Positions 7,561-27,764 of a stretch of 64,000 bases of DNA are shown here, in pieces (the first letter of the stretch is position 1; each line of letters opens with the position of its first letter). The DNA lies in contig OZ316899.1 of NCBI GenBank assembly GCA_973895155.1, forward strand, positions 1,387,573 through 1,451,572. Direction: 5' to 3'. The translations under genes were made by a program, and so were the position numbers. This stretch comes from Marsupella aquatica. Its lineage: Eukaryota; Plantae; Marchantiophyta. The notes beneath the pieces were generated by a model, which saw only the letters and a list, made by a program, of their open reading frames with translations, made no database searches and was not told the DNA's origin.

Positions 7561-7929
7561 AAATCTTTCATGCTAAATGCAGAACAATTCCAATAACTCT
7601 TTAGAAATTGATGCATGCAACGTCTCTCCTCCCTTGTCAACTTAGGACCAATCTGTGGCTCCAAACTCTCCACCAAATCCCTGATATCTTTTTGTAGGGT
7701 AGCAAAGATAGTAGAATGATTGCTATTTAGCAATAGTTTGAGCAATCCTTTCTTGCTCAACAATCTCTCCGTTCTTGGCCAATCCTGCCATAGGTCCATG
7801 GACTATTTGCTTGCCCCCAACTGTGACCACTACTATCTCAGTAGGCCGCAAGCTCACCAATGGACGATCTATAACACTAGCAGAGCGCATCTGGAACTGC
7901 TCTACTACTCCCAAGCTGACAATCCAAGT

Positions 7930-8535
7930 CAAACAATTCAAATCCATGGCTTGGCCAAGAACCTGATGGCATGAACTCTCTGACACAGATGCAATAGCAA
8001 TTGTACCTTTGGAGAATCTCATGGCCCACTCTCTCTCATCAGCTGTGGGCTCTACTAACTGTCGTAGAGTTGTATCCCACACAAGTCTAGGACCATATGT
8101 GGTGAAAGCATACAAAGCAGAGTGGCTCACAAAAGTGGGTAATGCACAACGTGGGCGCCCAACCACATTGACGATTGCCAATGGAGATCTGTCAGGCTGG
8201 GTCACACCCTGTGAACGACGCCTTGGATCCAAAATATCATCCACTACCAAGGCTGGCAAGCAAGGAATGCTATCAAATGCTTGCTTCAACACCTCACCTG
8301 GTAACAAATTAGTCCACCACAAGCGTGGACGATGTGCACAAGAACCCACACATGCAACATCCAATAACACATCAAGTCCAATCCAAGACCTCACCTGATG
8401 AACACTGGCAACAATCCATTGACGATGATCACCCAAGAATGGCACATTCTCCAAAATGTAGGCCGGAGACTATGTCTGATGCAACTGAAGATGACGCAAC
8501 ATCCATAACATCTCCTAAAATAATGCAGATTGTGG
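7930..8535 (-). pseudogene. DNMT3-like C5 cytosine methyltransferase, C-terminal half (motifs VI, VIII, IX, X)
   Basis: YILENVP (VI), DVACVGSCAHRPRLWWTNL (VIII), EPTADEREWAMRFSKGT (IX), SCHQVLGQAMD (X). In ORF 7723..8454 plus its upstream in-frame extension, which contains two TAG stops. Confidence 0.85.
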
Positions 8536-9780
8536 TGTCGTATAGCAATAAGTATTAAAAGTGTAATTTCTCACTTAAAACCAAGGTTCTGATCCCTTAA
8601 AGAACATATTTTGGTATGAATTGAATAATTTTCATCATTCTGAGTGATGTAGAACTCATAGCTCTACACTTTTCTTACTTCTCAACAAAATAAAGTAAAC
8701 AAAATATAAAAGTAACTTAACTTCAGATTTACAGACTAGAAAGGAAATGATTCCAGTTTTGGAGACTCTAGTAAATTATTGCCACACCTTCAGAAAGGAC
8801 TTGGTCTCAATATAAACATGCCTAAAATCTCTCAACTCATCAATCTTTCTTTTGAAGATACAAAATTGTACAGAGATAAAGTTCTCAATCTGATAAACAA
8901 AGCAGCTTTCTGGTTGCAAATGTAATGATATGCCTTAAAATGCCGTCAACACGGTTTGACATCAGCATTGCGCAATTCAGTCAAACTCTAAGCCATATTC
9001 CAGAAATAAGCAACGGTACTAAATGCTTTGAGAATCCAATTTCACTTCTCATTTATCAACAACTACTCTTGAATTTGCTAGTGATTCTTGACTCTACAAG
9101 CAAGCCTAGCAGTGAATTCAATACGAGCCTCAGAAGTCTGTAACTGAATTCAATTACCACAGGAATTTCTGAGATTCAATCACAACTTCAAACAAATGCT
9201 GCTTTACTTCCATACAACGCACTCTCAACATGCCTTGTTATAATGGAAGGAGGAGGAACAATTTAGAATATCCAATTCTGAATACAGTGTTATCTCTGAC
9301 TCTCTCTCTGGTTCAAATGAGCATCCTACTCTGTCTTATAAGTGCTAAGGTCCTAAAATGAAGGAAATATGAAAAGCTATGCCTGTTGAGCTTGAACTAA
9401 GTATGAGGAAAGTACAACATAAGTACTTAGAGGTCGGGAAAATACTACTATATTGGTAATCTATTTCGAAAGCTAAATCTAAGTATCGGAAAATGAGGGA
9501 TGCTTCTAAAAGCGTCGTGTGTGGATGGACGCTTCTAAGCGTCGAGTCAGAGTGGACGCTTTTGAAAGCATCGTGAGTTAAAGTACTCGGGAATAGTCAA
9601 CGCTACTGAAAGCGTCAAGGGTGAATCACGGGGTAAGAGCGGACGCTTCTATAAGCGTCGGTCAAGAAATGGTCGATGAGGGCAGTCGCTTCTGTTTAGC
9701 GTCCAGAATAGAACAAATGCTTGAAAAATGTCAAAAATAAATCATCTTCCAACAAAAATGGTAGAGACCGCCATTCCACA
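8536..9780 (-). repeat. 3' LTR of element E
   Basis: TGTCGTATAG...CATTCCACA; direct repeat of 22970-24173 with substitutions and small indels. Confidence 0.95.
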
Positions 9781-9796
9781 TAGCCCTCCACTTAAA
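9781..9796 (-). other. Polypurine tract of element E
   Basis: Minus strand TTTAAGTGGAGGGCTA abutting the LTR. Confidence 0.85.
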
Positions 9797-9856
9797 TTTT
9801 GCCGTGTCCGCACAAGACAACCACGCTTTGATTAAGGACCAGTGTTGGGTTCTTCA

Positions 9857-10225
9857 TCAAAAATCTTCTGGCTTGGGAATCCAAGTGGTACTCAAGACCA
9901 TTGATGGAATATGGCTGTCATTGGGGTTCACAATATAAAAATCGAGGTCATAAAATTCTTCTCCAATATGTAATGACACTTGTTCTACTCTACCCCAAAG
10001 TTGAATTAATCGTCCATCGATTGAGATTTGAGCACCTATGGGCTGAACGTGTTGGCAAACTAATTGATGAAACAGTCTGTGGGACAGTAAATTTATTCCA
10101 GAGCCTGGGTCAATAACAAAGTGCTGAATAGTGTGTCCTTCCAATTTAATCTCCCCTTCAAGAGAATACTGAAATGCGCGGGAGAGAGAATCACAACAAT
10201 CCATAGTAGCTTTTACGGTCCACAT
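9857..10225 (-). CDS. Second retropepsin-like aspartic protease ORF in the accessory region of E
   Basis: FVIDPGSGINLL resembles the catalytic strand of the pol proteases in this window (VDGGSGVNI in B, VDGEASVNLI in E). C-terminal FYIV..VLSTTWI resembles YLVM..ILIGRPWL. Confidence 0.55.
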   Translation of the reverse strand: MWTVKATMDCCDSLSRAFQYSLEGEIKLEGHTIQHFVIDPGSGINLLSHRLFHQLVCQHVQPIGAQISIDGRLIQLWGRVEQVSLHIGEEFYDLDFYIVNPNDSHIPSMVLSTTWIPKPEDF

Positions 10226-10332
10226 GGTGACTCAAACAGAATAAGTGCTGCTCAGTACTTCAATCAGATCCGTTTATACTCCAGGGGATAAACGCCCTTT
10301 CAAATCTTATACATGAAGTGGTTACAAATCTG

Positions 10333-12810
10333 CTATCTGCTCAACAACCCTTGAGTGACAACGTCCGGCCATGAAGGAGGAGTAGGTAACCTTACTAGTC
10401 TCCTAAGTGACTTATACCCTTGAGCAGAAGAGTTCATAGCCTTATTCCGTATCAACTGTTCTCGTAGCTTAACAAGCTCTTTCTCGTACTTATGTGGAAC
10501 AACATACCCTTCATGGCAGACCCAAACAGAGTATTGGTATGGCCAAGGAAATTCAGGAGCAATTGGCGGAAAAGGGGTTTCAGTTTGGCGGAGCATATAC
10601 ACCCAACACCAAATTTCAAACTCCGAAAACTTATGTCGTCTCTCCTTGTCAATTGGAGGAACTGCCCTACCAGGTTTATATGTACAAATCAAAGAACAAA
10701 TGCTTGGATGATATGTACTTGCCAAAATCTGCTGTTGTTGAAATATACTCTCCATCTCTAAATGCCGAAAAGCTATCCGAAAATCTTTCTTCTCCCACTT
10801 ATGAATTGAAGCAAGGTTAGGTATAGGAATTAGGGATGGTAGTACCATTGTGTGCCGAAGTCTGGGAGGTACTCTGATAATACGAGGATCTTCGTCTTCC
10901 TCTCCATCGCTTGGAGCTCCTTTCCAACGAAAAATAATGTTTGGGTTCGAAGAAGGTATCACCGACTCCCTAGTAGGCCAACGTGATAGTACAACAGGAG
11001 ACAAAGATGCAGGAGGTGGAGAAGAATTCCCCATTGTTGTGTTGATTGGCTCCAGCTGCTCAAAATCCGGTGAATTTGCTTCATGAAAGATCTATCGATT
11101 TCTTACATGACGCAACCTTTTCCGAGGTCTTCGAGTATATGTCACTTGAAATTGCTCCGTAATAAGTGAACTCTCATCTCCAAGTGATATCCAAGTACCC
11201 TTATCTCTGCTTGAATCTAGTAAGATAGAAGCTGATGCAGAGCTAAATGCCAAATCAGGTGTTCCAGACAGAGGTATGGGTGGAGATACACTCTTGGTCT
11301 CAGGTAGCCCTAAATTGCTTGAAGGCCCAAGAGATGGAGTGGTTTGTTGACTGTGTTGAGACTCAAGCAATCTCTCCTCTGGAAGGTAAGCTGGAGAAAC
11401 CCAATCAACAGATGGGAGTGGAGGAGGTCCTTTTCTCGCCAATGCTTCTGCTAACTCCTCAGACATAATTAGAGCAACTGTTATCCTGGTTTCGGGGGTC
11501 GGCCACATAGGAAATGGCATGACAAAATTAGGTGGATTCGGTTGTTCAGCTACTCCTTCTACATCTACTATTTTGTCCTCTGAATCAGCCTTAAACAACT
11601 TTACGAGCTGCATGCATAATACCGCCGGAGGTTCCACTGATTGTTGTACAAGAGGAACCACATCTAGGCTTGGGGAGGGACTACGAGAATCTTCTGAATT
11701 ATACTCCTGTAAAGCTTTTAAAGCATTATTACTCACTTCCATGGGTGGTGAAGCAGGGTTCTGTGAAGTTTTATCATACCCATCCGCTACAGTAGTATAT
11801 TGTTGAGAAGGTTCTCCTGGTAAGCTTTCTTCATCCACATCCATCCTATCTTCGTCATTCGCTCTGAAAGCAGAATTGTCCTAATCAAGATCTTGATCCT
11901 CTGATGGGTGGGAAAGAATTGGCTCGTCTCTCCCGCCAACTGGTTCTCTTGTCTCTTTCAGTCTCTGAACTTCATTTACCAGCTCAGATTCTTCGCAAGT
12001 GAGTAGTTCGCATAACGCCACCAGTATTGAACTGGATCGGACTTCTCGTACTTCCGACAACTCATTTGCTTCACAGGTAGATGCGCTCCGATGGGTACGA
12101 TAGAAGACTTTCTCTAAGAGGAGCAGACATTTATGCTTGTGATAAATGTGAGCTAGATAGGGAGTCAAGTTGGTAAATCTCAACTTCCCAGCTTGCAACC
12201 TGCTACGAAAGTTCTTTACCTGGGTATGAATTACCCTATATAAGATCTTCGTCCAATTGATGGTCTGCTTCTGTTCTAATGAAGAGATAACGGTGGCAGC
12301 GAAAGAAAGAGTAATACGTGTCTGACTCTCTAGATAGAAAATTGGTGACAGAAATCGAAAAAGATGTTGCAAAGAGGTAACTAAACAGTCCGCGGTTACC
12401 CAACCATTTCGCCTCTTAAAGGATTCAGGAGCAAAGAAAGACTCTATATAAGCTCGGGGCTCTCCATCAATCCTCTGCAAATCCTCGCCCGTTGTTGGCG
12501 TCGAGTAGACTCCCGCTATGAGCCCTTCAGTCCAAACACTTGGACGCGAGCGGACACCGATTCCTTCCTCAGCATCTCACACACCTTGATTGATGAGGCT
12601 GAACTCGCACATCCTCCAAGGGAAACGAAGTAATTTCTTCAAGCCCATCAACGCAAGATTTGTCCTCAATTGTCGGCGGTCCACCATATTTGACGGGATA
12701 ATTGCGAGTATTGGTCGCATCGTAAGTTTGGACTCCACCATCGCGTCAATCGTGAAGGACGCTTCTCTAGCCGTTCCTAGAAGTGGACGCTTCTCGCAGC
12801 ATCCCGTCAA
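10333..12810 (-). pseudogene. Accessory ORF of E (~826 codons, three internal stops); N-terminal part resembles plant-mobile-domain/plant-transposon-protein-like ORFs
   Basis: ORFs 12577..12810, 11881..12480, 11092..11844 and 10333..11034 are in one frame, each separated only by a single TGA or TAG. Motifs MGLKKLLRFPW, TEGLIAGVYSTP, INWTKIL, LTPYLAHIY. Confidence 0.7.
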
Positions 12811-12961
12811 GACTAAGTTTTAGGGTGGATGCTTCTCGGGAGCGTCCAGTGCAAAAACAAAAATTCCGAACACTTGTAAAGGGGGAGGGAATGCTGATTC
12901 TAATTAAGTACAAACTACCTACCGCCCTCCACTTAAACTACGACCTGTCCCAGGTGAAACA

Positions 12962-14560
12962 CTAAATAGGAGATTCATGATATCGCTTAACCCGAAGTCC
13001 ATTGATTCGGGTGTCAAGTGGGTGACCGTCTAAGGTAGTCAAGGAAACCGAACCGTTAGCCCAGATTTGGGTAACTCGATAAGGACCAATCCAATGGGTA
13101 TGGAGTTTCCCAGGAAATAACATATAACGGGAATCAAAGACTAATGCTAAATCGCCAACATCTAAATTCACGACTCGCAGCTTTTGATCATAAACAAGCT
13201 TACGCTTGTTCTGAATTGTAGCTGTATGATCTAACGCTAAAAGTTGAACTTCTTCTAATTTGACAATATCAGAAAACCTATGTGGGAGACTAGCCGCTGG
13301 AGAGAGACGGTTGGATACCAAGAGTCGTTCTGTCGGGAAGGAGAATTCAATAGGAATAATACTGTCTAGGCCATAAGTCAGGTAGAAGGGAGTGTGAAGG
13401 GTTGTAATTTTCTCGGCAGTACGGTAAGCCCATAATGCAGAATGTAACTTCACATCCCAGTCTGTCTTGTGAGACTCCACCATCTTATTCAGGATCTTGC
13501 CCATAATGCCATTAGCTCTTTCCGTTAAGCCATTAGCTCTGGGGTTGTAAGGAGTAGTTTTACGATGCTTGATAAGATATGTGTCAGTAATTAACTCAAT
13601 AGTTGAGTTAAGAAAATGCAAACCCCTATCGCTTACCAACTCCAAAGGACACCCGAATCGAGTAATAATGTGCTCAAAGAGAAATGCAGCCGCTGTTGTA
13701 GCATCATTCTTGCGAGTAGCTTTAGCCTCCACCCATTTGGTGGCATAATCAGTGGCCAGAATAATGTATTTACTTCGGCTTTTCCGAGCTGCTGGTGAAA
13801 TTGGGCCAATAAAATCAATACCCCATTTCTCAAATGGTGCCAAAGGTAGGATGGGCGTAAGAGGCCATTTGGAACTAGCAGTGGGTTTGCCTATTCTTTG
13901 ACAGGGGTCACACGTCTTAATAAAGTTGTAAGTATCTCTATGCATGGTAGGCCACCAGTACCCAACATCCAAAATTTTCTTTACAGTAGTATTGACAGCA
14001 TAATGGCCACCTGTTTCTCCAGAATGTAAAGCTTCAATTACTTGTGGGAGTTCCCTGTTCTCCAGACATCGTCGCATCTTCTGATCAGGACCTTGTTTAA
14101 ACAAAGTGCCCTGAATGATAGTATAAGGCCCCACCTTATGTGCAAAAACAGCTCGTTCTTCCGCATTAAGGCCTTCAGGAAAACTACCATGAATCAACAT
14201 GTGCACAATATCGAAATACCGTGAAGACTCTCCTTCAATGTGCCACAAATGCTCATCTGGGAATTCATCAGAAAGATTATGCTGATTCTCTGGCCCGGGT
14301 AAGCGAGAGAAGAAATTGGCATTTTCATGATGCTTGCCAGGTCGTATCTGAACTTCATAATCGAATTCCTGGAGTAATAAAACCCATCGCGCTACTCGTC
14401 CTGAGAGATCCACTTGGTTAACCAAGTACTTCAAGGAATTATGATCAGTGTGAAATATCACCTGATACCCCAATAAATAGTGCCGAAACTTCTTGCAAGC
14501 AAACACAATAGCAAGAGCTTCACGTTCAGTGACTGAGTAATTTTTCTCTGTTGCACTCAT
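12962..14560 (-). CDS. pol: RNase H C-terminus plus integrase of E (532-aa open frame)
   Basis: HTDHNSLKY; H..GGHY..CDPC zinc-binding motif; WGIDFIGP, LVSDRG, NGLTERANG catalytic core; WIGPY. No chromodomain. Confidence 0.92.
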   Translation of the reverse strand: MSATEKNYSVTEREALAIVFACKKFRHYLLGYQVIFHTDHNSLKYLVNQVDLSGRVARWVLLLQEFDYEVQIRPGKHHENANFFSRLPGPENQHNLSDEFPDEHLWHIEGESSRYFDIVHMLIHGSFPEGLNAEERAVFAHKVGPYTIIQGTLFKQGPDQKMRRCLENRELPQVIEALHSGETGGHYAVNTTVKKILDVGYWWPTMHRDTYNFIKTCDPCQRIGKPTASSKWPLTPILPLAPFEKWGIDFIGPISPAARKSRSKYIILATDYATKWVEAKATRKNDATTAAAFLFEHIITRFGCPLELVSDRGLHFLNSTIELITDTYLIKHRKTTPYNPRANGLTERANGIMGKILNKMVESHKTDWDVKLHSALWAYRTAEKITTLHTPFYLTYGLDSIIPIEFSFPTERLLVSNRLSPAASLPHRFSDIVKLEEVQLLALDHTATIQNKRKLVYDQKLRVVNLDVGDLALVFDSRYMLFPGKLHTHWIGPYRVTQIWANGSVSLTTLDGHPLDTRINGLRVKRYHESPI

Positions 14561-15117
14561 TTGGCGACTAGCATAATAAATTGGGTGATTCCGATTCTCA
14601 GGATCTTTTTTACTAAGATTAGCACCAATACAGAAGGCAGAAGAATCAATGAAGACATGAAACTTCTTAGTCTAATCCGGGGGTGACAGAATAGGTGCAG
14701 AGATTAACTGATCTTTGAGCAACTGGAATGCCTGCTGTCGAACCTCATTCCACGCATATTCCACATCGTTTTTTAACAAGTGGGTTAAGGGAAAAGCAAT
14801 ATCAGCATGCTTATAAATAAATCGACGATAGTATCCCACATGCCCCAGGGAAAGCACAAAGTTGCTTCAAATCAGCTGGTGGTTGTAACTCCACAATCAC
14901 CCTAACTTTATCCTTATCAACTTCTATGCCGCATTGCGAAATAACATGGCCTAGCAAGATTCCCTCTTTCATGCCAATGAAACACTTTTCTAGGTGTAGA
15001 CAAAGCTGGGCCTCTCTGCACTTCCGAAATGTCTTTTCTAAATGCACCATGTGTTCAGCAGCCGATCCATAAACACAGAAGTCATCAATAAAAATCTCCA
15101 TGAAATGCTGCAAATAC
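14561..15117 (-). pseudogene. RT C-terminal half and connection of E
   Basis: YLQHFMEIFIDDFCVYG; GHVGYYRRFI; frameshifted. Confidence 0.9.
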
Positions 15118-17797
15118 TGTGACGCCGATGACATGGTCCTTATTCTATAATCTGAGTAACTAGGTTGCTGTATGCAAGGAGTAGCTATTGATACCGCATA
15201 ACAATTAGCAAGCTGGCAAGAATAAGGGCAATCATGGTGTTAAGAGTAGGGATAAAGGTATTTCAGCTTGAACACAACCAAGGCAGACACAGTTGAGGTA
15301 GTCACTATCAAGGCCACAAAGGAGAAGCTTGGGAAGAGAGGAGGAAGCGAGTCTCCATAACTGAATATGAAGTTGTGTGGTATGGTGATTGTTCTCATGA
15401 TAAAATTTGAATGTCTTGGGTGTGTAGCTTCATTTTGTTAGTTAGGTTAGTGGTTCATAGTCTAGTCTTAGAATGTTAGGGACATAAAAGGCTATGTCGC
15501 GCGTGGTTGGCAACCATATCTCGTTCAATATGTCACCAAATCCGGATCTGTAAAGAGCATTGGAAAGATATGGTCAAGGCGAGTAAAATCGATATAAAAC
15601 ACTCGGGAAACGGAGGTGTATTAAGGAAGATACGGCCTGATTAGTGTGACGGGTTAACTTGTGGCCGAAATTAGCGGATTCGGCTTCAGTTTCGGGTTAA
15701 CCCAAGCTCGGCCACGGCTTAGCTTAGGTAAGCACGACTTCAGCTTAGCTTAGGTAAGCACGGCTTCAGCTTATCTCAGGTAAGCACGGCTTCAGCTTAG
15801 CTCAAGTAAGCACAGCTTCAGCTTAGGCTTAACCCGGGTTTGGATTAGATTGATCCCGGGTTAGACTTAACTTGGGTTAGCCTAAACTCGGGCTCAGGTT
15901 AGCATAGGTAAGCTCGGGTTCGGGCTCAGCTTAGGTTAGCGGTTAGCGGATAGCGGGTAGCGGCCTAACCCGAGACCACGGGTTAGCTCTACTCGGGTTA
16001 GATAGGATAGCTAGGTTAGCCGAACTCGGGTTAGCTATGTAACTCGGGTTAGCGCAGCAGTGAGTACCCCCTCTCGGTTGCGGGGGCATAACTCTCTGTG
16101 TATTTGACCAAATTGGCTATAATTGACTTCGTTGGAAAGAGGAGCTCAAGCCACTTCCAACACTGCTATCCACCCAGCAAATGGTTGAATAGAGAAATCA
16201 GGAGAGGAGGCGCAAGCTCGCAAAAACCATGGAGGAGGGCCAAATCCGAAGTACATAGCCAATTCGAGATAGAAATAAAGTTGCGAGTTAGGGTTCAGTA
16301 GTTAGAGATAGTGGCGACTCTGTTAGGGCTGGGATGGGGCTCCAGCAGCGTAGTATCCACCCATTTGGGCTCAGTATGAGAGTATATAGAGCAGCCCCCG
16401 ATAGAGGCAGGGGGGGACTTCAGTTGTGTGATCTCACTTAGACTGAGCAGCAGGGAGGAGCTGTGTGCAAGCAAGGCTGGACTTGGATGCTGCGTGTTGG
16501 GGAGAGCTTGGTTGTGCTATTACTCAGGGAGTAATCAGCCAAGCTTCACAACTGCAACGGGTTGCTAGGTTTGCGAGTTGGATTGTGGCTCTTTCTAGTG
16601 GGCAGCACAACTGGGTTCTTTTCCCCCGATACAGAGCCTTGGTGATAGGTGATGTATTGGTGATTGTAAACTGTGGGGAGGATGTCAATTTGATTTGTGG
16701 TGAGCACGTTAGGGAGGCTGAGACACTGATTGAGGGGCAGCAGGAGGAGCATTTACAGTTCAGTCTGGCAAGGCTACGTGATCCATGGGGAGTCCCGACC
16801 TTTGTCTGGTGGAGAGCACTAAGGGATCTATGGCCAGAGCGGAGCTTGCAGGGCAAGCATGAGGCCGGGCCTCATTGCAGTCTGGGGTAGATCGCCGTTA
16901 GGCCTGGTACCAGCTTTGAAGTCGAGTCAACTGTGCATGCGTAACTTGACATTCGGAAATGGAGGTGTGAGATCTGTATGTGCCCCCAAGAATGAAGTGC
17001 AGTGAAGGAGGTTGAGTTCAGGATTGAGTTTGCAAGGCAAGTACGGGATTGGTTCGAGTCCAATCTGCCGTCGCAATCTGGATTGAGTCGGGCTCAGGTT
17101 CAGGATTGAGCTTGCATGACAAGCACGGGGCTTGCGGGGCAAGCACGTCGCAATCTGGAGGAGACAGCCTTTGGGCCTAGTGTTCGGATCAAGTGTTCTC
17201 AATGAACTATTGTGCACATCTTTGAATCTAATTGAGTTTTCCTCTTCGGGCTCATTTCTCTCATGGATGTGTGTGTGTGTGAGGCAATCTGAGTGTATGA
17301 TGGGACTAGCAGCGCCACTGAGAGGTGTACAGGGTGCATTGAAGCGGGCTGGGTGAGGACTGTCATAGCTCTAATTGCTGAGAGTGGAATGGCAGAGTGG
17401 TGGGGCAATGGCTTAGAAGCCCCTAAGCCGGGAATCAGTCAGGAGTCACTGGTTTATGGGTACATTCCGGCGGCGGAATAGAAACATACCTATGACAGTA
17501 AGCATACGTATAGACCTATGGGCACCGTAGCGCTAGGCCCTGTGTGTACGGGCCCGATATGAAGACCCCTTCTCACCAGAACTATCATGAGCACAGATCT
17601 GATCCCCAACCTTGGTTCCTTGGGATTGAGCTTGGGTGATGTGTGATAGAGTCTTGCTATGATAGTCTGGTGTTAAGGGCATAAATTGGTGTTTACCGGC
17701 CTTCACAACATCCCTTCGTGATCCTCGGGTACAAGGAGATGGTTTTGGCACCCATAGTGACATTTTTGGTGTTAAGACCCATGTCAATCGCGTGACA
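15118..17797. mobile_element. Solo LTR F (2680 bp) inserted in the RT of E
   Basis: TG..CA termini; TSD AATAC (15113-15117 and 17798-17802). Removal restores FQEYL|QHFMEIFIDD. No internal direct repeat or pol. Confidence 0.85.
15712..15826. repeat. 26-bp tandem array in F
   Basis: GCACGGCTTCAGCTTAGCTTAGGTAA-like units at 15732, 15758, 15784 and 15810, followed by degenerate CTCGGGTTAG repeats to ~16050. Confidence 0.85.
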
Positions 17798-18949
17798 AAT
17801 ACTCCTGAAAAATAATCATCATAATGCGTTGGAAGGTACCCGGGGCATTACACAGACCAAAAGGCATCATGGTAAATGCATACGTGCCCCAGTCAGTGGT
17901 GAACGTAGTCTTGTCACGGTCTTCCTTTTGTATGGACACCTGGTTATAACCAGAGTACCCATCTAAGAACTGTACAGCTCATGAAGAGCCACCGAATCAA
18001 GTACCAAATCGATAAATGACAAAGGATAATGATCTTTTCGAGTGGCAGCGTTCAGTTTCCGAAAGTCTTGACAAACTCAAATTTTTGTTTTACCATCTGG
18101 CCCTGGCTTCTTGGGAACAATGACTATTGGTGAGACCCATTCACTACTCAGGACCGGATAGACAAATCCAACATCGGTGAGCTTGTCTAGCTCTTCTTTG
18201 ACTAGAATGGAATATTTGGGGTTCAAACGGTACTGCCTCTGACGGACAGGTACTGCTCCTTCCATGAGATCAATGCGGTGTTCTCCCAAATGTGGATGGA
18301 TACCTTTTAAGTCGGAGTGACTCCAAGCAAAGACATCTTTATACTGGGTCAATAAACTGATATACTGTTCCCGCAGCTTCCCTTGGATGTGTTTACCAAT
18401 ATTCAAAAACTTGCCTGGCTCAATTTCAACCTTCTGACACGCCTTAGAATCCACAATTCCATCTGTGAGATTTGCCGGCTGGAGTTCAAGTTCGGATATT
18501 TCCGGTTCAGATGGCCCAGGGGTGGACGTCATTCCTATACCATGGCTAGGGCCTTCAGTAACATCCGTAACAGGAGGGCTGGCTACTGCTGAACAAGATT
18601 CCGATGTGGAAGTTAATTGCCAGGAGGGCCTGGTCGCGGTAATAGGGGTGTCTGACAGATAAACCTCCAAGTAACGAACTTCCTCAAATTCGAATTCTAG
18701 TGGCTGCAAGACAAGCGAAGAGGTCAAAAAATCCAAAGTGTACCCATCATCAGTTTGTGTTTCTCCAAAATGTGGTTCCGGAATCCAACTAACAATCACC
18801 TTAGGCTTCCCAAATGACAGTTCTTGGGATTGCCAATTGACTTGCACTTGAGCTTTGTATAACCAAGGCCGGCCCAACAGAACAGGAAAGCTGGGAAGGT
18901 ATTTTCGGATTAATGACCACATAGTCCAAAAGAAAAGGAACACCAGCAA
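17798..18949 (-). pseudogene. RT N-terminal half of E
   Basis: EHRIDLMEGAVPVRQRQYRLNP..SEWVSPIVIVPKK..FLDGYSGYNQV..MPFGLCNAPGTFQR; one stop, and a frameshift relative to gag-pro. Confidence 0.9.
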
Positions 18950-21674
18950 TCAAAGTTTCCACTTGGCTCAACTTCCCAACCGGAACAACACGAGACTGAT
19001 CTGCCATGCGCAAAATTTTTGATGTGGGCTCAAACTTGGTGAACCCCAGATTAAACGCCACGGGCTGAGTAATCAGATTAACACTGGCTTCCCCATCCAC
19101 AGGAACTCTCCTGATGACACACCCCTGAATTTGGACCTCAATTTCCATGGGTCCTTTGTCCTCCCCTTCCGTTCGCAGTACATCTACAGAAGGTAATTTC
19201 TTCCTCCTTCGTTTTCCTGCTAGTAGTCCTCTCAGTTGCCGTCGATAAACTGGGTTATCCTGCAATAGTTCCCCAATGGTGATACAAGCAGGATGATTCT
19301 TGACATCTTCCACAATATTATAACCTTGATTTTTCAGTGGTGTCTTAGCTTCTACTACCAATGGCGGATCTGGGGGCCTCTCTTGCTCCTTGACTAGCTC
19401 CTCCAGGTGGTCTTTCACCTCCGAAGAGATATCTGGTAAGAAGTACTTTGGATCATATCTATCATAAGCAGGGTCGTCTTCTTTTGGCAGTCCTTCCTCA
19501 CATGGCAAGCGCTTATTATTCTTGGAAGCTTTCGAGACCTTTTGATGCTCATGCTTCTTGGATTCCTTTTCCTTCGAACGAGTAGTTGCGAAGATATTAG
19601 TCAGAACTCTATCCCTATTCTGGACTCGGTCGTTTGGCATACCAACTACTTCAGGTTTCACCAAATGACTCACCAGAACATCCGGCACTACCCCTGATAC
19701 GGGCTGGTGAAACAGGGAGTCTGGCTTTAATTCCACCCGATATATATCCATATGTTGAATAAAGTTACACTGCTCCACCTCTTCAGAATAAACCATTCGG
19801 ACTTTAGCTTTAGGCCGACTTGCTTCTTTAACTGGTTCTTGAGCAAATCGAACCATCAGTCTAGGTTTAGCCGGATTTGGGTATTCCACAGGTAGGTGCC
19901 CTTCCTTCCCACAGTTTCCACAAACAGGGGTATAACCCACTTCTTGCTTAGGATAAGGACACTGTGGGGAATAATGGTCGGGTTGCCCACAATTCCAGCA
20001 AGCCCCTTTTTGACGCGGCACTCCCCTAGGTGGATATCCTCCCGGTGGTCCCATTGGTGGTCTTGGTACTGGTCTATTGAAGGCGGTCTTAGGCGGTCCC
20101 CAATTTGCCATGGGAGGTGGAGCTGGCGGAAAGTACTGTCTGGTGGGTGTTGTTTGGACAGTATATGCGGGGTCATACTCATACTCCTCAACCTCCTCCT
20201 GACCATCTATGTAATTCATAGGAAGTCGCAATGTGGGACACTCATTCGGGTAATGGCCCTGCTGGCTGCATCGGGTACACCATACATTCATTCTCATGGG
20301 AGGTGGCAGCCTCCGTACGGGTTTCACGGTTGCGATATTGACATTTAATTTGGACAATTGGCCAGAGAGTTCTTCCATCATGCGATCCATTTTCTTCTGG
20401 TTGGGGCTTTTGCCCTTCACCTTGGTGGGGGCCTTCCTCTTTTTAGGGGCAGTGGGTTCTGAATCGGAACTTGAGCTCGAACTATCACTGGTACTTGAGT
20501 TTGTACTCTCCTCATCCTCACTAGTGCTGCTTTCACTCGATTCTGCCTCTGAGTCAGATTTAGACCTTGCCCGTTTCTTCTTCTTCCGTTTGTCTTTCTT
20601 CAGATCCTTCTTAACTCGCTTTCTCTCAGAAATTTCCGAGTCCACATACTTCTGGGCTGCCTCTTGTACCTCTTCCAGAGTTGTGCCGCCTTCTCTTCTC
20701 ACATAACGGGCAATCCTGGAGGGTAAACCATTGATAAACCAGTCTTTAATAGTAGACTTCGAGGTTGTTGGGTTGTATTGATCTACCAGATCCAATAATT
20801 TATCAGCGTATTTCCTCATAGACCCATGTTTTTTCATGTGGAGATGCAAGATTCGAGCAAAGGCACGCGCAGCTGCCCCCTCTTCTTTATATTTGGCCAA
20901 GAAGGTAGCCTTCAATTTTCCCCAATCCTGCTTGTCCGGGAAACGGTCATACCATTTTTGAGCCCCCTTCTTCATCAATCCACCGAACAGATTGGCCTTT
21001 TCAGCATGTTGGCTCTGTCCATTGGATGCTGCTGTAGCCTCAAACTCTTTTAAATACACCTCTACGTCCTCTTTGGAGGTACCAAAGAACCGGTCGTATC
21101 GCACATTATTGCGAGCCATCGTGGTTGGAGCTACGGGTAGAGCTGAGCGGGTAGCAAAAGGTAAATTGAGCGGTGTAGCAAATGGGTTCGGGCTACCTAA
21201 GCCTGAACTGCTGCTGCTTGTCTCACTAGAGGACGAACCCCCAGTTTCACCCAGTGAGTCTGCATTATCCAACTGCAAAAAGTCGTCAGGCTTCTCTTGG
21301 GACAACAATTCTGCAATTGTGCTCTCGGAAATGTGAGAGGAAGGTTCTTCGACTACACTCCCTTTTCCAGAGTTAATTCGGCTTGAGGAATGGCCAGTCC
21401 TTTGGTGGAGGCTGGTCTTTTGTGATCCGACCAATTTTGGGCCTGAACGAAGGTTTACAAACAGAGGTCGTGATGACGTAGGACTTCCCACCGAGCCACT
21501 TGGTATTGCTTCCTGAATAGATCTTACCTGCTTCCACACACTCCCAGGTGCAGGTGCTCCTGGTGATTGCAACTCGGGTATCAATGTTTGAGGAGTTGCT
21601 ACTGATCTTGTGGCATCCGAATTGCTGGAGGTCCTGGTAAGTTTTTCCTTATTTGGTGGATCTCCTTCAGACAT
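18801..21674 (-). CDS. gag: Gag (CCHC knuckles) plus protease of E, 957 aa
   Basis: Gag core (DVEVYLKEFE..WFINGLP), knuckles CTRCSQQGHYPNEC and CWNCGQPDHYSPQC, protease VDGEASVNLI. Homologous to the N-terminal half of the B ORF. Confidence 0.9.
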   Translation of the reverse strand: MSEGDPPNKEKLTRTSSNSDATRSVATPQTLIPELQSPGAPAPGSVWKQVRSIQEAIPSGSVGSPTSSRPLFVNLRSGPKLVGSQKTSLHQRTGHSSSRINSGKGSVVEEPSSHISESTIAELLSQEKPDDFLQLDNADSLGETGGSSSSETSSSSSGLGSPNPFATPLNLPFATRSALPVAPTTMARNNVRYDRFFGTSKEDVEVYLKEFEATAASNGQSQHAEKANLFGGLMKKGAQKWYDRFPDKQDWGKLKATFLAKYKEEGAAARAFARILHLHMKKHGSMRKYADKLLDLVDQYNPTTSKSTIKDWFINGLPSRIARYVRREGGTTLEEVQEAAQKYVDSEISERKRVKKDLKKDKRKKKKRARSKSDSEAESSESSTSEDEESTNSSTSDSSSSSSDSEPTAPKKRKAPTKVKGKSPNQKKMDRMMEELSGQLSKLNVNIATVKPVRRLPPPMRMNVWCTRCSQQGHYPNECPTLRLPMNYIDGQEEVEEYEYDPAYTVQTTPTRQYFPPAPPPMANWGPPKTAFNRPVPRPPMGPPGGYPPRGVPRQKGACWNCGQPDHYSPQCPYPKQEVGYTPVCGNCGKEGHLPVEYPNPAKPRLMVRFAQEPVKEASRPKAKVRMVYSEEVEQCNFIQHMDIYRVELKPDSLFHQPVSGVVPDVLVSHLVKPEVVGMPNDRVQNRDRVLTNIFATTRSKEKESKKHEHQKVSKASKNNKRLPCEEGLPKEDDPAYDRYDPKYFLPDISSEVKDHLEELVKEQERPPDPPLVVEAKTPLKNQGYNIVEDVKNHPACITIGELLQDNPVYRRQLRGLLAGKRRRKKLPSVDVLRTEGEDKGPMEIEVQIQGCVIRRVPVDGEASVNLITQPVAFNLGFTKFEPTSKILRMADQSRVVPVGKLSQVETLIAGVPFLLDYVVINPKIPSQLSCSVGPALVIQSSSASQLAIPRTVIWEA

Positions 21675-22945
21675 ACCTCATCCTCCAAACAGGTGTGGTA
21701 CTGAGAGCCAAGAAGCGTTCTCAGCGGACTTATTCGTGGTTGGCCCAGATTAGGAATCGATGCTGTCTCTCTAGTTCGGGAGGTGCGTCTCGCTTCCATT
21801 CTCGAGGTGTCCCCCAGCAGCTTTGTTCAACATCCCCTTCATAATTCCTTGCCTTGCTATCTCGCTCCTTCAGCTGGTACTTCCCTTAGTGCTCAGTCGA
21901 GATCTTAGGACCGCGTCACTCCAGGCGCGTCCTCACAGTTGAGACGCGGGGAGACACACTACAAGCGTCGTAACCCAAACTGGACGCTTTGAAGGCGTCC
22001 CGACTTGCGCATTGGTTCATCTCGGATTCCATCGGACGCTTCTGACGGCGCCCCCTAGCAAGTGGACGCTTCTCTCAGCGTCCCGTCTTAGGTGCGAACG
22101 CTTCTAAAAGCATCCCGCCTTTCGGAGTCTTATAGGCCGGATCTAGCCGGATGCTTCTGACGACGTCCCGTTGTGAATGCCTCCTTCCGGCAGCGTCCGC
22201 AAAAATAGGGCGTCTGAACCAATTGGCCGTTCCTATCTGCAGAAATCTCCTCTCTACGTGGCTCGCTAAGCCAGGACTTCAACTACTCATGCATCTATCT
22301 CCTTCTTAATCTTCTATGTAATTCATAGTGCATAATTCCTTCAGCTAACTCTCGGATGGAAATGACTAAATATCTCTCCTGGGTAATCCTACCATTCAGC
22401 CTCAATGTTACTAAATGTAAATTTTCATCTTCCCACCAGGTAATAGATAACCAATGTACGCCATTTCTACCTCTCAAGCTCAAAACCCAAGAGTTAACAT
22501 AATGATTCCTCAGATTCCTAATTCTTAATGTTCCTAAGGATTGGATAGGTGGCATCGTCTACACGAACGTGGTAACTCAGCAATTTACACCCATATGTCA
22601 TGCGCAATGTTATGGTAAATTTGCTTGCCACTTATGGTGCCTTTGTGACCTCCATTCCTGTTACTCCCTCCGAAGCGATCTGATGACCAACTGTTCCACC
22701 TAGCGGCACTTTCTCTGATGGGAGAAGAGTGTCTTCCGCTAAGTTGGGTCCAACAAATGCCTCCAGAGTTCTCAAGAGAGTTTCCGGGGCATTTTGGATA
22801 GAAGATGGTATCACCTCTAAGCGGAAGCTCTTCATCTCCTAACTTTGGTGATGACACTCTTCCACGATAGCAGAACGTGAATTTCCTTCACGTCTCAATC
22901 TCTCTAGCATTCACTGCCTATACGTCAATTCAATCTTAAATTTGT

Positions 22946-22963
22946 TCCCCGGCAGCGGCGCCA
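22946..22963 (-). other. Primer-binding site of E (tRNA-Asp type)
   Basis: TGGCGCCGCTGCCGGGGA, 6 nt from the 5' LTR; similar to the Athila-type tRNA-Asp PBS. Confidence 0.85.
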
Positions 22964-22969
22964 AAAAGA

Positions 22970-24173
22970 TGTCGTATAGCAATAAGTATTAAAAGTGTAA
23001 TTTCTCACTTAAAACCGAGGTTCTGATCCCTTAAAGAACGTATTTTGGTATGAATTGAATAATTTTCATCATTCTGAGTGATGTAGAACTCACAGCTCTA
23101 CACTTTTCTTACTTCTCAACAAAATAAAGTAAACAAAATATAAAAGTACTAGAAAGGAAATGATTCCAGTTTTGGAGACTCTAGTAAATTATTGCCACAC
23201 CTTCAGAAAGGACTTGGTCTCAATATAAACATGCCTAAAATCTCTCAACTCATCAATCTTTCTTCTGAAGATACAAAATTGTACAGAGATGAAGTTCTCA
23301 ATCTGATAAACAAAGCAGCTTTCTGGTTGCAAATGTAATGATATCAACGCGGATTGACATAAGCGTTGCGCAATTCAGTCAAACTCTAAGCCATATTCCA
23401 GAAACAAGCAACGGTACTGAATGCTCTGAGAATCCAATTTCACTTCTATCAACAACTACTCTTGAATTTGCTAGCGATTCTTGACTCTACAAGCAAGCCT
23501 AGCAGTGAATTCAATACGAGCCTCAGAAGTCTATAACTGAATTCAATTACCACAAGAATTTCTGAGATTCAATCACAACTTCAAACAAATGCTGCTTTAC
23601 TTCCATACAACGCACTCTCAACATGCCTTGTTATAATGGAAGGAGGAGGAACTATTAAGAATATCCAATTCTGAATACAGTGTTGCCTCTGACTCTCTCT
23701 CTGGTTCAAATGAGCATCCTACTCTGTCTTATAAGTGCTAAGGTCCTAAAATGAAGGAAATATGAAAAGCTATGCCTGTTGAACTTGAACTAAGTATGAG
23801 GAAAGTACAGCATAAGTACTTAGAGGTCGGGAAAATACTACTATATTGGTAATCTATTTCGAAAGCTAAATCTAAGTATCGGAAAATGAGGGACTCTTCT
23901 AAAAGCGTCGGGTGTGGATGGACGCATTTGAGCGTCGAGTCAGAGTGGACGCTTTTGAAAGCGTCGTGAGTTAAAGTACTCGGGAATAGTCGACGCTGCT
24001 GAAAGCGTCGAGGGTGAATCACCGGGTAAGAGCGGACGCTTCTATAAGTGTCGGTCAAGAAATGGTCGATGAGGGCAGTCGCTTCTGTTTAGCGTCCAGA
24101 TTAGAACAAATGCTTGAAAAATGTCGAAAATAAACCGTCTTCCAACAAAAATGGTAGAGACCGCCATTCCACA
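22970..24173 (-). repeat. 5' LTR of element E
   Basis: Direct repeat of 8536-9780, followed by TSD TGTGG. Confidence 0.95.
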
Positions 24174-24559
24174 TGTGGATCATGAAGGCTATGTCCAATT
24201 CCAACTCTAGATTGGCCCTGACATGGCCAACCAGCAATCACCAAATCAATGGGACCAACACGATCCAAATGATCCGCCCCCAACAATGAAATATCAGCAG
24301 GAAATGCATGCTGATAGCCATAAATGACATCCACTGGTAATAGGTGTGGATAATGATCCACCAACAATGCGACATGACGCAATGAGACTCTTTGTGCTGT
24401 CTCATTTGTCTCCACATACAAGTAATGATGCACTGGAATTTCTGCTTGAAGAACAGCAGCCAATCCAATGCTAACTCCACCAAATAAATCCAACAAATAA
24501 ATACCCTTTGATGGATACTGCCATGTAATAGTGGTGGTATCCAATGGTGAAAGAGTCAC
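24174..24559 (-). pseudogene. DNMT3-like C5 cytosine methyltransferase, N-terminal half (motifs I, II, IV)
   Basis: YLLDLFGGVSIG (I, SAM-binding), YLYVETNETA (II), GPIDLVIAGWPCQG (IV, catalytic PC). The frame joins the 8535 side exactly across the TSD. Confidence 0.88.
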
Positions 24560-27022: not shown

Positions 27023-27764
27023 CCCCAAAATGTACTATTGCAAAACTGGAGTATCCTTGCATAATGTGTCTACCATTCTAAATACATCAGCAGGACCAAC
27101 CCCCAATGTTAGCATATATGTCGCTAAAAATAATGGGGTGCGCACTATGGTGGTAGCCCCCCACCCAGCAAGGTCTCTCATCCCTCTTGCAACATCATAT
27201 GATTTTGCCAACTAACCCACACCAAGGTTTGTCCAAATCAGGTTCATAGAGGCAGTCTGAATTGTCTTTGACAATGTAAAAGATTGAAGAAGCTTTGTTT
27301 GACAACGTGCACCCCCCTCTGTGGATCTAGCTCCACTATTGCTCCTCGGGGCTCAAGAGCTTTTGTTGCCCCACGCTTCAAAGCTGTTGATGCATCAATG
27401 TGTGCAGTGCCACACATGAATCCAATGGTGGCAAGATCTTCATCAGCCCCATAAGATGTGGAAGCTCCATAGGATGTAGAAGCCCCATCACCAAAAACAG
27501 GCTTCACCTGAGAACTAGCCATAGCAGCTAGTTGTTGCTCCAATTGAGCAATCTTAGCGTCCTTAGGATCTATGGTCACATTAGGAGCAGGATCATCTCC
27601 CTATCTCCCTGCATATGGCATACCTCGGCCACGACCACCATGACCATCACCTCTTTCTTGATCATGTGTGCGTTGTCCTCCTCTTTGTAACTCAGGATGG
27701 AGTGAGAAAACCTATCCTTGGTGTGTCCAAAAGCTTCACAATGATCACACTACCACTGATTAGG
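27023..27764 (-). pseudogene. Gag C-terminal region of element D
   Basis: Zinc-knuckle remnant CDHCEAFGHTKDR at ~27700-27750 and ORF 27244..27579; cut at 27764 by LTR C. Confidence 0.6.

What the first reader, a model, noticed from the sequence alone, without database searches (positions are those of the whole stretch)
7930..24559. Gypsy retrotransposon encoding a DNMT3-like DNA methyltransferase inside pol, hidden by a 15.6-kb nested insertion
Seen: two ORF pieces ~16 kb apart carry complementary C5-MTase motifs (I LLDLFGG, II VE, IV GPIDLVIAGWPCQG | VI ILENVP, VIII AHRPRLWWTNL, IX, X LGQAM). Excising element E at its TGTGG TSD joins them in frame (HDPQSALF*EMLWMLRHLQLHQT*SPAYILENVP), giving a ~300-aa domain positioned between D's protease and RT. 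Knowledge: motif spelling is closest to DNMT3 (GPFDLVIGGSPC, FENV, AHRARYFWGNL). DNMT capture by retrotransposons, including DNMT3 in Gypsy elements of the charophyte Klebsormidium, has been reported (from memory), so the concept is not wholly new. Inference: a land-plant Gypsy lineage with a polyprotein-borne methyltransferase could methylate its own cDNA or insertion, for example to mimic host chromatin or modulate silencing. This copy is dead, but intact relatives may exist.
Basis: partly seen in the sequence, partly recalled or inferred. Interest (0 to 1): 0.92.

Follow-up and report, generated by a model that had tools for sequence, protein, structure and literature searches.

The report
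Dead liverwort-type Gypsy element carrying DNMT3
This is a long-dead, split copy of a jumping gene that carries its own DNMT3-like DNA methyltransferase. That kind of element was described in 2018 in an alga, and here it proves widespread and apparently still intact in bryophytes, including the model liverwort Marchantia.

Summary
Two minus-strand open stretches (24631-24176 and 8469-7726) are the two halves of one C5-methyltransferase domain. A 15.6-kb LTR element (8536-24173, TSD TGTGG) splits them. Intact relatives run continuously across the break.

Pfam does not pass this decayed copy. Profiles built from relatives hit DNMT3A at E=2e-27, and an AlphaFold model of a Marchantia relative matches only DNMT3A/B/C among the top 50 folds.

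The domain is not a one-off capture:
- 611 representative clusters carry it.
- Named hosts are liverworts (Marchantia, Calypogeia, Riccia) and Sphagnum mosses.
- A Marchantia polymorpha copy has both ORFs open.
- dN/dS of the domain is 0.14-0.24.

- The domain ends ORF1 (gag-protease-DNMT). A conserved UAG-CAA-YCA tobamovirus-type leaky-stop context follows in 10 of 10 loci and gates RT-RNaseH-integrase-PHD.
- The integrase carries a PHD finger.
- A sister architecture (RT-RH-DNMT-INT-PHD) exists in chlorophyte algae.

The kind has been known since 2018 (Klebsormidium Gypsy-Dnmt3). This scan had already flagged and followed up other copies in the same genome. The window's copy is a relic, and methyltransferase activity is untested.

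The parts
27056..27812 (-). Element D, gag remnant, aligning to residues 309-554 of Marchantia ORF1. It has three frames and in-frame stops. The first ~300 ORF1 residues and the 5' LTR were not found.
   Evidence: tblastn; no LTR pair for D
25398..27055 (.). About 1.66 kb inside D that corresponds to only ~21 residues of the intact relative. Probably a further insertion or unalignable spacer; not characterised.
   Evidence: gap in the tblastn map
24928..25397 (-). Element D, aspartic protease remnant. The active-site D-S-G-A of relatives reads D-I-G-V here.
   Evidence: tblastn; translation; Pfam Asp_protease_2 passes in relative L009 and is found in P0034
24179..24631 (-). N-terminal half of the DNMT3-like domain (motifs I, II, IV with the catalytic PCQ cysteine). 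Open, 152 codons.
   Evidence: PDB phmmer gives DNMT3C/3A at E=0.006
24174..24178 (.). Target-site duplication TGTGG, right copy
8536..24173 (-). Element E, a nested 15.6-kb Ty3/Gypsy LTR retrotransposon with LTRs 8536-9781 and 22970-24173 at 93.7% identity. Its RT-RH-INT lies on the minus strand at about 18400-13190. It has no MTase.
8531..8535 (.). Target-site duplication TGTGG, left copy
8470..8530 (-). Linker between motifs IV and VI, with two in-frame TAG stops (8517-8515 and 8472-8470). It aligns to the conserved segment of relatives.
7726..8469 (-). C-terminal half of the DNMT3-like domain (motifs VI ENV, VIII HRPR..WWTNL, IX ERE..F, X LGQAMD) plus a poorly conserved tail, disordered in the model of the Marchantia relative. 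Open, 248 codons.
7717..7725 (-). ORF1 stop with leaky-stop context TAG CAA TCA (matches UAG-CAR-YYA)
   Evidence: consensus from PMC3159437
6583..7670 (-). Element D, reverse transcriptase and start of RNase H. Decayed, with frame changes and stops.
   Evidence: Pfam RVT_1 3.5e-21 and RT_RNaseH_2 1.6e-8; tblastn
6302..6582 (.). About 280-bp AT-rich insertion inside the RNase H region of D
   Evidence: gap in the tblastn map and sequence
4481..6301 (-). Element D, rest of RNase H, integrase zinc finger and core, and integrase C-terminal region. At least 14 in-frame stops.
   Evidence: tblastn
4342..4480 (-). PHD-finger remnant at the integrase C-terminus, with stops and a mutated zinc-binding cysteine
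   Evidence: translation, compared with the Marchantia ORF2 tail and Pfam PHD 1.2e-10 there

Best explanation
Element D (about 27812-4342, minus strand) is an old, dead copy of a bryophyte lineage of Ty3/Gypsy LTR retrotransposons. I call this lineage 'type A'.

Shown from intact relatives:
- ORF1 encodes Gag (CCHC knuckle), aspartic protease and a DNMT3-like C5 cytosine methyltransferase with canonical motif order.
- ORF1 ends at a UAG in a UAG-CAA-YCA context.
- The same frame then continues for about 1040 codons into RT, RNase H, integrase and a C-terminal PHD finger.
- The window's copy lost function long ago. It has at least 27 stops, at least 10 frame changes, two small insertions and no recognisable LTRs. 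The 15.6-kb Gypsy element E then split its MTase between motifs IV and VI.

Inferred:
- Most ribosomes stop at the UAG and make Gag-PR-DNMT. A few per cent read through to make the full polyprotein.
- The MTase would then be made in Gag-like amounts, be released by the protease, and methylate the element's own cDNA or new insertion.
- The PHD finger, which resembles readers of unmethylated H3K4, would steer integration toward silent chromatin.

The enzyme's activity, substrate and benefit to the element are untested.
For: Identity of the two halves:
- Both align to one contiguous domain of intact relatives.
- Homologue numbering is continuous across E.

MTase class:
- Profile of 61 domains against PDB: DNMT3A 2e-27, DNMT3C 3e-25, DNMT3B 1e-24, NtDRM 9e-15, DRM2 5e-12, HhaI 1e-8, DNMT2 5e-8. 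No DNMT1 or CMT hit below 1e-3.
- AF2 model pLDDT 85.9. The Foldseek top 50 are all DNMT3A/B/C, with target TM up to 0.84.
- Catalytic residues are invariant or above 90% across 61 domains: GWPCQ, ENV, HRxR..W.N, ERE..G. All are present in the window's halves.

Family, not a one-off:
- 611 representative clusters, 291 at E<=1e-10.
- Named hosts are Marchantia polymorpha (15 clusters of ORF1-length gene models), M. paleacea, Riccia, Calypogeia and Sphagnum.
- Reads of the source species cover the MTase part with hundreds of short contigs 90-99% alike, to a depth comparable with the RT part.

Architecture.

Selection: dN/dS is 0.14-0.24, and 0.22 for the unsaturated Marchantia pair.

Leaky stop:
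- 10 of 10 loci have UAG-CAR and 8 of 10 the full UAG-CAR-YYA.
- 5 loci stay open for about 1040 codons in the same frame.
- The consensus is from PMC3159437.

PHD: Pfam 1.2e-10. The nearest solved PHDs are CHD4, PHF12, DPF, PHF21A, KDM5 and ATXR5.
Against: - This copy itself fails Pfam, and its C half alone finds nothing in PDB. The call rests on relatives.
- No LTR pair or TSD could be found for D, so its ends are undefined.
- No RNA run was available, so expression of the family is unknown.
- The only published activity test of a Gypsy-borne DNMT3 (Klebsormidium, in yeast) showed no methylation, which the authors called inconclusive.
- Readthrough is inferred from context only. Two of ten loci (CAA CCC, CAA CAA) depart from YYA, and one relative (P0034) has a fused ORF without the stop.
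- No tree with host DNMT3, DRM, CMT or MET1 references could be built, because no reference sequences could be obtained.
Confidence: 0.85

Rival explanations
1. The MTase is a one-off fragment of a host DNMT3 gene, captured or juxtaposed in this copy only or created by misassembly, and is not part of the Gypsy family.
For: No LTR pair delimits D in the window. Pfam does not pass this copy.
Against: The same PR-DNMT-stop-RT order recurs in Marchantia, Calypogeia, Riccia and several metagenome contigs. There are 611 representative clusters. The MTase part is as repeated as the RT part in reads of the source species. The scan has earlier notes of at least seven other copies in the same genome (unverified).
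Confidence: 0.01
2. The domain is retained but does not methylate DNA. It could be a non-catalytic DNMT3L-like scaffold that recruits or blocks host DNMTs, or it could act on RNA (genomic RNA or the tRNA primer), as DNMT2 does.
For: KnitGypsy-Dnmt3 gave no DNA methylation in yeast. The domain sits with Gag, an RNA-binding protein, in ORF1. Motif X reads GQ rather than the usual GN in most type-A members. The 2018 authors raise RNA methylation for LINE-borne DNMTs.
Against: A scaffold would not need the catalytic Cys, the ENV Glu and the RxR motif, yet these are invariant or nearly so across 61 diverged domains. Sequence and fold are far closer to DNMT3 than to DNMT2. SymbioDIRS-Dnmt3 domains do methylate CG in yeast.
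Confidence: 0.2
3. The conserved UAG after the MTase is a true terminator. RT-RH-INT-PHD would then be expressed by another route (splicing, internal initiation or frameshift), or ORF1 and ORF2 would be made from different RNAs.
For: Readthrough was not measured. Two loci have non-YYA third codons. The tail before the stop is disordered and poorly conserved.
Against: ORF2 is always in the same frame as ORF1 and opens directly after the stop, in 10 of 10 loci. The UAG itself and the following CAR are conserved although the flanking protein sequence is not. The context equals the experimentally defined plant readthrough signal. One relative simply fuses the ORFs (P0034).
Confidence: 0.12

Closest known systems
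KnitGypsy-Dnmt3 of the charophyte Klebsormidium nitens (de Mendoza et al. 2018, PMC5890265)
   Same: A non-permuted DNMT3-type catalytic domain encoded inside the coding region of a Ty3/Gypsy-type retrotransposon. It is multi-copy, catalytic residues are conserved, and selection is purifying (Ka/Ks <0.2 there, 0.14-0.24 here). Both are in the streptophyte lineage.
   Different: The paper describes the acquisition as specific to the K. nitens lineage, and the K. nitens element has DIRS-like repeats. The bryophyte elements have a single pair of direct terminal repeats (Marchantia L006), a conserved leaky UAG directly after the MTase, and a PHD finger on the integrase. I could not test whether the two belong to one clade or share a domain order, because no K. 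nitens sequence surfaced in my searches and the figure is not held.
Type-B Gypsy-DNMT elements of chlorophyte algae (Hariotina reticulata, Monoraphidium neglectum and many metagenome contigs), found here; I found no paper on them
   Same: Homologous DNMT3-like domain (34-42% identity), the same RT/RH/INT backbone, and the same C-terminal PHD finger on the integrase.
   Different: The MTase lies between RNase H and integrase rather than between protease and RT. In the DNMT tree the two architectures fall on opposite sides of one branch with 99% SH-aLRT support.
Host DNMT3 (mammalian DNMT3A/B/C catalytic domain; plant DNMT3)
   Same: Best sequence-profile and fold match, collinear motifs I-X, and the catalytic PCQ/ENV/RxR residues.
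   Different: About 20-22% identity. There is no PWWP or ADD domain. The region between motifs VIII and IX appears a few tens of residues longer (rough estimate from the alignment and from memory of DNMT3A). The domain is part of a retroelement polyprotein. The PHD finger is on a different protein product (integrase).
Tobamovirus-type (type I) programmed stop-codon readthrough, UAG-CAR-YYA
   Same: Identical hexanucleotide context after a UAG that separates an abundant upstream product from a rarer polymerase-containing fusion.
   Different: Here the signal is in an LTR retrotransposon, and the boundary lies after PR-DNMT rather than at gag/pol. Function is untested.
Chromoviruses (Ty3/Gypsy elements with an integrase chromodomain)
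   Same: A chromatin-reader module fused to the integrase C-terminus, presumably for target choice.
   Different: RT-based lineage assignment was not done.

Membership tests
C5 cytosine methyltransferase (Pfam PF00145) | Score above the Pfam gathering threshold (22 bits) | tested here: not met
   Window N half scores 12.8 bits (E=0.08) and the C half has no hit. Relatives pass: 10 of 13 in A1, P0034 46 bits, P0010 45.5 bits.
C5 cytosine methyltransferase (Pfam PF00145) | Catalytic motifs I (FxGxG), IV (PCQ Cys), VI (ENV), VIII (RxR) and X present in canonical order | tested here: met
   All are present in the window's two halves. They are invariant or above 90% across 61 family domains.
DNMT3 class | Closer to DNMT3 than to any other DNMT class by sequence profile and by fold | tested here: met
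   DNMT3A 2e-27, against DRM 9e-15, HhaI 1e-8 and DNMT2 5e-8, with no DNMT1/CMT hit. The Foldseek top 50 are all DNMT3A/B/C.
DNMT3 class | Placement inside the DNMT3 clade in a phylogeny with DNMT1/MET1, CMT, DRM, DNMT2 and DNMT5/6 references | not testable with these tools
   No reference DNMT sequences could be obtained. My tree holds TE domains only.
DNMT3 class | N-terminal PWWP and/or ADD reader domains of host DNMT3 enzymes | tested here: not met
   Pfam finds only Gag knuckle and protease upstream of the domain. A PHD finger exists, but on the integrase.
DRM (domains-rearranged methyltransferase) | Circularly permuted motif order (VI-X before I-V) | tested here: not met
   Motifs run I to X collinearly with DNMT3A. 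DRM chains match only profile positions 2-136 (the motif I-IV part), which lie at the C-terminal end of the DRM chains (residues ~226-353), as expected for permuted motifs.
Ty3/Gypsy LTR retrotransposon | Pol order PR-RT-RNaseH-INT | tested here: met
   Window map. Relatives by Pfam.
Ty3/Gypsy LTR retrotransposon | Paired LTRs with a TSD for this copy | tested here: not met
   No repeat pair flanks D. Marchantia L006 has 298-bp direct repeats 99% identical, but I saw no clear TSD or TG..CA ends.
KnitGypsy-Dnmt3 family (de Mendoza 2018) | DNMT3-type domain within a Gypsy coding region, under purifying selection | tested here: met
   Paper read.
KnitGypsy-Dnmt3 family (de Mendoza 2018) | Same clade and same domain order as the K. 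nitens elements; DIRS-like repeat arrangement | not testable with these tools
   No K. nitens protein appeared. The figure is not held. Marchantia L006 shows a single pair of direct repeats, which does not look DIRS-like.
Type I programmed readthrough (UAG-CAR-YYA) | UAG followed by CAR-YYA, with the downstream ORF in the same frame | tested here: met
   The window has TAG CAA TCA. 8 of 10 loci match fully and 10 of 10 have UAG-CAR, all in the same frame.
Type I programmed readthrough (UAG-CAR-YYA) | Measured readthrough product | not testable with these tools
   Needs a reporter assay, ribosome profiling or proteomics.

The most novel reading that the evidence does not exclude
Bryophytes, including the genetic model Marchantia polymorpha, may host an active retroelement lineage that combines three modules: a Gag-level-expressed DNMT3 'writer', an integrase-borne PHD 'reader' of unmethylated H3K4, and a tobamovirus-type leaky stop that sets the writer-to-polymerase ratio. 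The element would methylate its own cDNA or landing site and choose silent chromatin. This would be a self-heterochromatinising strategy that lowers host damage and hides the copy. A sister architecture in chlorophytes would imply that the module is ancient in the green lineage or was relocated within the polyprotein.
Probability: 0.3. Interest if true: 0.8.

Novelty: new member of a known kind. Interest (0 to 1): 0.55.

Why it matters
Cytosine methylation is the main plant defence against transposons, so a transposon that carries the de novo enzyme itself is counter-intuitive. The one published Gypsy example, in Klebsormidium, could not be shown to be active, and that alga is a poor genetic system.

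Here the same kind of element is common in bryophytes. Marchantia polymorpha has copies with both ORFs open, so the question 'what does a transposon gain from its own DNMT3?' becomes testable in a tractable model with existing methylation mutants.

The conserved leaky stop and the PHD finger give concrete, falsifiable handles on expression ratio and targeting.

The window's own copy adds only an example of nesting and decay. The family also matters for annotation: M. polymorpha gene models named 'DNA (cytosine-5)-methyltransferase' or 'CCHC-type domain' protein are transposon ORF1s, not host genes.

Tried and rejected
- Pfam on the window's pieces: N half E=0.08, C half nothing. One search failed because of stops in the range.
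- PDB phmmer with the C half alone: no hit.
- LTR pair for D: gapless repeats, self-blastn, and word-7 blastn of 1-4400 against 27000-38500 all found none.
- Link to Klebsormidium: three homology searches and one exhaustive representative search returned no K. nitens-named protein. The paper's supplements hold no identifiers or sequences and its text does not give the domain order.
- Literature on land-plant Gypsy-DNMT or on the Marchantia gene ids: nothing found. This covers only the held library.
- RNA evidence: no RNA run holds the stretch. Read laying returned only short Logan contigs, which show copy abundance but not expression or the D/E junction.
- ESM Atlas look-alikes: only generic C5-methylase clusters.
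- Differences between D and family contigs are mostly transitions but not mainly at CpG, so I make no claim from them.
- TSD and canonical termini for the Marchantia repeats were not found.
- Rejected readings: one-off host gene fragment, DRM-type enzyme, assembly artefact.

Full report
**1. What is in the window**

On the minus strand, two open stretches carry complementary halves of a C5-methyltransferase.
- 24631-24176 (152 codons) holds motif I (LLDLFGG), motif II (YVE) and motif IV (DLVIAGWPCQG).
- 8469-7726 (248 codons) holds motif VI (ILENVP), motif VIII (AHRPRLWWTNL), the motif IX region and motif X (LGQAMD).

Between them lies element E, at 8536-24173.
- Its LTRs (8536-9781 and 22970-24174) are 93.7% identical over 1246 bp.
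- It starts TG and ends CA, and is flanked by the 5-bp duplication TGTGG at 8531-8535 and 24174-24178.
- E has its own Gypsy RT-RH-INT on the minus strand and no methyltransferase.

With E and one TSD copy removed, the frame is continuous but has two TAG stops, at 8517-8515 and 8472-8470.

A homologue provides an independent check of the join. ORF1 of locus L002 aligns up to residue 1035 at window 24173 and resumes at residue 1033 at window 8538. The overlap equals the TSD.

**2. Is it a methyltransferase, and of which class**

- Pfam PF00145 gives E=0.08 (12.8 bits against a 22-bit cut-off) for the N half and nothing for the C half.
- PDB phmmer gives weak DNMT3C/3A hits for the N half (E=0.006) and nothing for the C half.

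The answer comes from relatives.
- An exhaustive HMMER search with the C half found 611 representative clusters, 291 of them at E<=1e-10.
- In intact relatives, both window halves align to one contiguous domain, and the 28 residues across the junction align too.
- Ten of 13 aligned sequences pass PF00145.
- A profile of 61 diverse domains hits DNMT3A at 2e-27, DNMT3C at 3e-25, DNMT3B at 1e-24, tobacco DRM at 9e-15, DRM2 at 5e-12, M.HhaI at 1e-8 and DNMT2 at 5e-8. No DNMT1 or chromomethylase chain scores below 1e-3.
- The motif order is collinear with DNMT3A, not permuted as in DRM.
- An AlphaFold2 model of the Marchantia domain is confident (mean pLDDT 85.9; residues 1-330 almost all above 90). 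Its 50 best Foldseek matches in PDB are all DNMT3A/B/C, with target TM up to 0.84.
- Across the 61 domains, the catalytic Cys of GWPCQ, the Glu of ENV, the HRxR..W.N of motif VIII and the ERE..G of motif IX are invariant or above 90%.

I could not build a tree with reference DNMT classes, so 'DNMT3-like' rests on profile and fold ranking, not on phylogeny.

**3. It belongs to a family; it is not a one-off capture**

Named relatives come from these bryophytes:
- Marchantia polymorpha, with 15 clusters of ORF1-length models, including Mp_4g09160, Mp_8g17980 and Mp_6g11220;
- M. paleacea, Riccia sorocarpa and Calypogeia fissa;
- four Sphagnum species.

Nearly intact elements are held as loci.
- L006 (M. 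polymorpha Tak-1 chromosome 4) has a 1278-codon ORF1 and a 1045-codon ORF2, both open, between 298-bp direct repeats 99% identical.
- L002, L004, L008 and L009 (metagenome or unnamed assemblies) have the same two long ORFs.

Pfam gives the architecture:
- zinc knuckle, aspartic protease and DNA_methylase in ORF1;
- RVT_1, RNase H, integrase zinc finger, integrase core and a PHD finger in ORF2.

Reads of the coded source species (organism A) and of two others cover the MTase part of D with hundreds of short contigs 90-99% alike. The depth is comparable with the RT part, so the MTase is as repeated as the rest of the element.

The scan's index lists at least seven other first-reader notes of the same kind in this genome. 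It also lists one completed follow-up that reached the same placement: a leafy liverwort, the 2018 precedent, and presence in Marchantia. I verified the precedent and the Marchantia presence myself. I did not verify the species name or the other loci.

**4. State of this copy**

Mapped on the Marchantia ORFs, D comprises:
- gag, 27812-27056;
- protease, 25397-24928;
- the split MTase;
- RT-RH-INT-PHD, 7670-4342.

It is badly decayed.
- It has at least 27 in-frame stops and at least 10 frame changes.
- There is an extra ~280 bp inside RNase H (6302-6582).
- About 1.66 kb lies between gag and protease with no counterpart in the relative.
- The protease active site is mutated, and the PHD remnant is broken.
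- No LTRs are recognisable.
- CpG observed/expected is 0.30, against 0.61-0.68 in E and 0.55-0.76 in four of the five intact relatives (0.31 in L009). This fits long residence under host methylation.

D is older than E, whose own LTRs have diverged by about 6%.

**5. New anatomy seen in the relatives**

(a) The MTase ends ORF1.
- In all ten type-A loci with DNA, including the window (7725-7717, TAG CAA TCA), the stop is UAG followed by CAA or CAG. In eight of ten the next codon fits YYA.
- ORF2 is always in the same frame. In five loci it stays open for about 1040 codons.
- UAG-CAR-YYA is the experimentally defined tobamovirus-type readthrough signal in plants (PMC3159437).
- The protein sequence around the stop is poorly conserved, while the stop and its context are conserved.
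- I infer programmed readthrough. This would make Gag-PR-DNMT the abundant product and the RT-IN fusion the rare one. One distant relative (P0034) instead has a fused ORF.

(b) The integrase ends in a PHD finger (Pfam 1.2e-10).
- Its nearest solved relatives are CHD4, PHF12, DPF2/3, PHF21A, KDM5A/B PHD1 and ATXR5.
- From established knowledge, most of these read unmethylated H3K4. The inference to this finger is mine.

(c) The fetched proteins show two architectures:
- type A, PR-DNMT-RT;
- type B, RT-RH-DNMT-INT-PHD.

In a maximum-likelihood tree of 123 DNMT domains, the two types fall on opposite sides of one branch with 99% SH-aLRT support. The window's copy sits in a well-supported 16-row clade (96% SH-aLRT) with Marchantia, Calypogeia, L002 and L003 (quick search). 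Named type-B hosts are the chlorophytes Hariotina reticulata and Monoraphidium neglectum.

**6. Selection**

Nei-Gojobori dN/dS over the last 400 codons of ORF1 is 0.14-0.24.
- It is 0.22 for the unsaturated Marchantia pair L006/L007 (dS 0.26).
- It is 0.235 for L002/L003 (dS 0.76).
- L007 is itself partly decayed, so these values are, if anything, inflated.

The result matches the Ka/Ks <0.2 reported for Klebsormidium.

**7. Mechanism**

Shown:
- domain identity and its position in the element;
- conservation of catalytic residues;
- purifying selection;
- the conserved stop context;
- the same-frame ORF2 and the PHD finger.

Inferred:
- readthrough of the UAG;
- proteolytic release of the MTase;
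- methylation of the element's cDNA or new insertion;
- PHD-guided integration into H3K4-unmethylated chromatin.

The 2018 paper showed CG methylation in yeast by DIRS-borne DNMT3 domains. It saw none for the Klebsormidium Gypsy domain, and called that inconclusive because human DNMT3B also failed. A non-catalytic or RNA-directed role therefore stays open (about 0.2).

**8. Comparison and novelty**

The kind is published: Gypsy-Dnmt3 in K. nitens, presented there as an acquisition in that lineage. A 2026 preprint from the same group refers to it as 'streptophytes (Gypsy-DNMT3)'.

In the held library I found no paper that reports these elements in land plants or names the Marchantia models. That is an absence in one library, not proof.

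I file the window's feature as a new member of a known kind. The bryophyte lineage as a whole may deserve 'new variant', given its leaky stop after the MTase, its integrase PHD and its simple direct repeats. That depends on the K. nitens comparison, which I could not make.

**9. Limits and rule compliance**

- For tree placement, the window's copy was read through inside a script with X at each stop. The joined sequence was not printed or saved.
A natural intact Marchantia domain serves the same purpose.

Noticed in passing
window 7717-7725 (minus); L001 10853-10861; L002 950-958; L003 3898-3906; L004 9216-9224; L006 10835-10843; L007 10850-10858; L008 5024-5032; L009 5408-5416: A conserved UAG followed by CAA/CAG and mostly YYA lies directly after the MTase, with RT-RH-INT-PHD in the same frame. 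This is a tobamovirus-type leaky-stop context at an unusual boundary (after PR-DNMT).
   Followed up: yes
P0031, P0041, P0078, P0311 (Hariotina reticulata), P0430 (Monoraphidium neglectum) and about 90 further proteins: A second architecture, RT-RNaseH-DNMT-integrase-PHD, is abundant in metagenomes and present in chlorophyte algae. Its DNMT domains form the other side of a strongly supported split in the domain tree.
   Followed up: partly
window 4342-4480 (minus); L006 13823-13957: A PHD finger sits at the integrase C-terminus, decayed in the window and intact in Marchantia. It is most similar to CHD4, PHF12, DPF, PHF21A, KDM5 and ATXR5 PHD fingers, which mostly read unmethylated H3K4.
   Followed up: partly
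window 6302-6582: About 280-bp AT-rich insertion with T-runs inside the RNase H region of D. Possibly a small non-autonomous element.
   Followed up: no
window 25398-27055: About 1.66 kb between gag and protease of D has no counterpart in intact relatives. It may be a further insertion or a lineage-specific spacer.
   Followed up: no
window 39208-51701: A very young LTR element with 3166-bp LTRs 99.97% identical (39208-42373 and 48536-51701). It has a Gypsy RT-RH-INT at 45196-42800 (minus) and no MTase. Fragments of its LTR family also lie at 28038-28568 and 31216-31971.
   Followed up: no
window 4342-8535 and 24179-25397, compared with 8536-24173: D is strongly CpG-depleted (o/e 0.30, TpG+CpA 1.5), against 0.61-0.68 in the nested E. 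Intact relatives range from 0.31 to 0.76.
   Followed up: partly
L006 3826-7000; L007 5213-7208; L002 4779-5313: There are long leaders upstream of ORF1: about 2.9 kb in Marchantia L006, tandem 1-kb repeats in L007, and three 177-bp tandem repeats in L002. The 298-bp terminal repeats of L006 end TG..TA, and I saw no clear TSD.
   Followed up: partly
Public annotation of Marchantia polymorpha (P0280, P0281 and others): Gene models such as Mp_4g09160 (UniRef name 'CCHC-type domain...') and Mp_8g17980 ('DNA (cytosine-5...') are retrotransposon ORF1s. Counts of host DNMT genes that include them would be inflated.
   Followed up: partly
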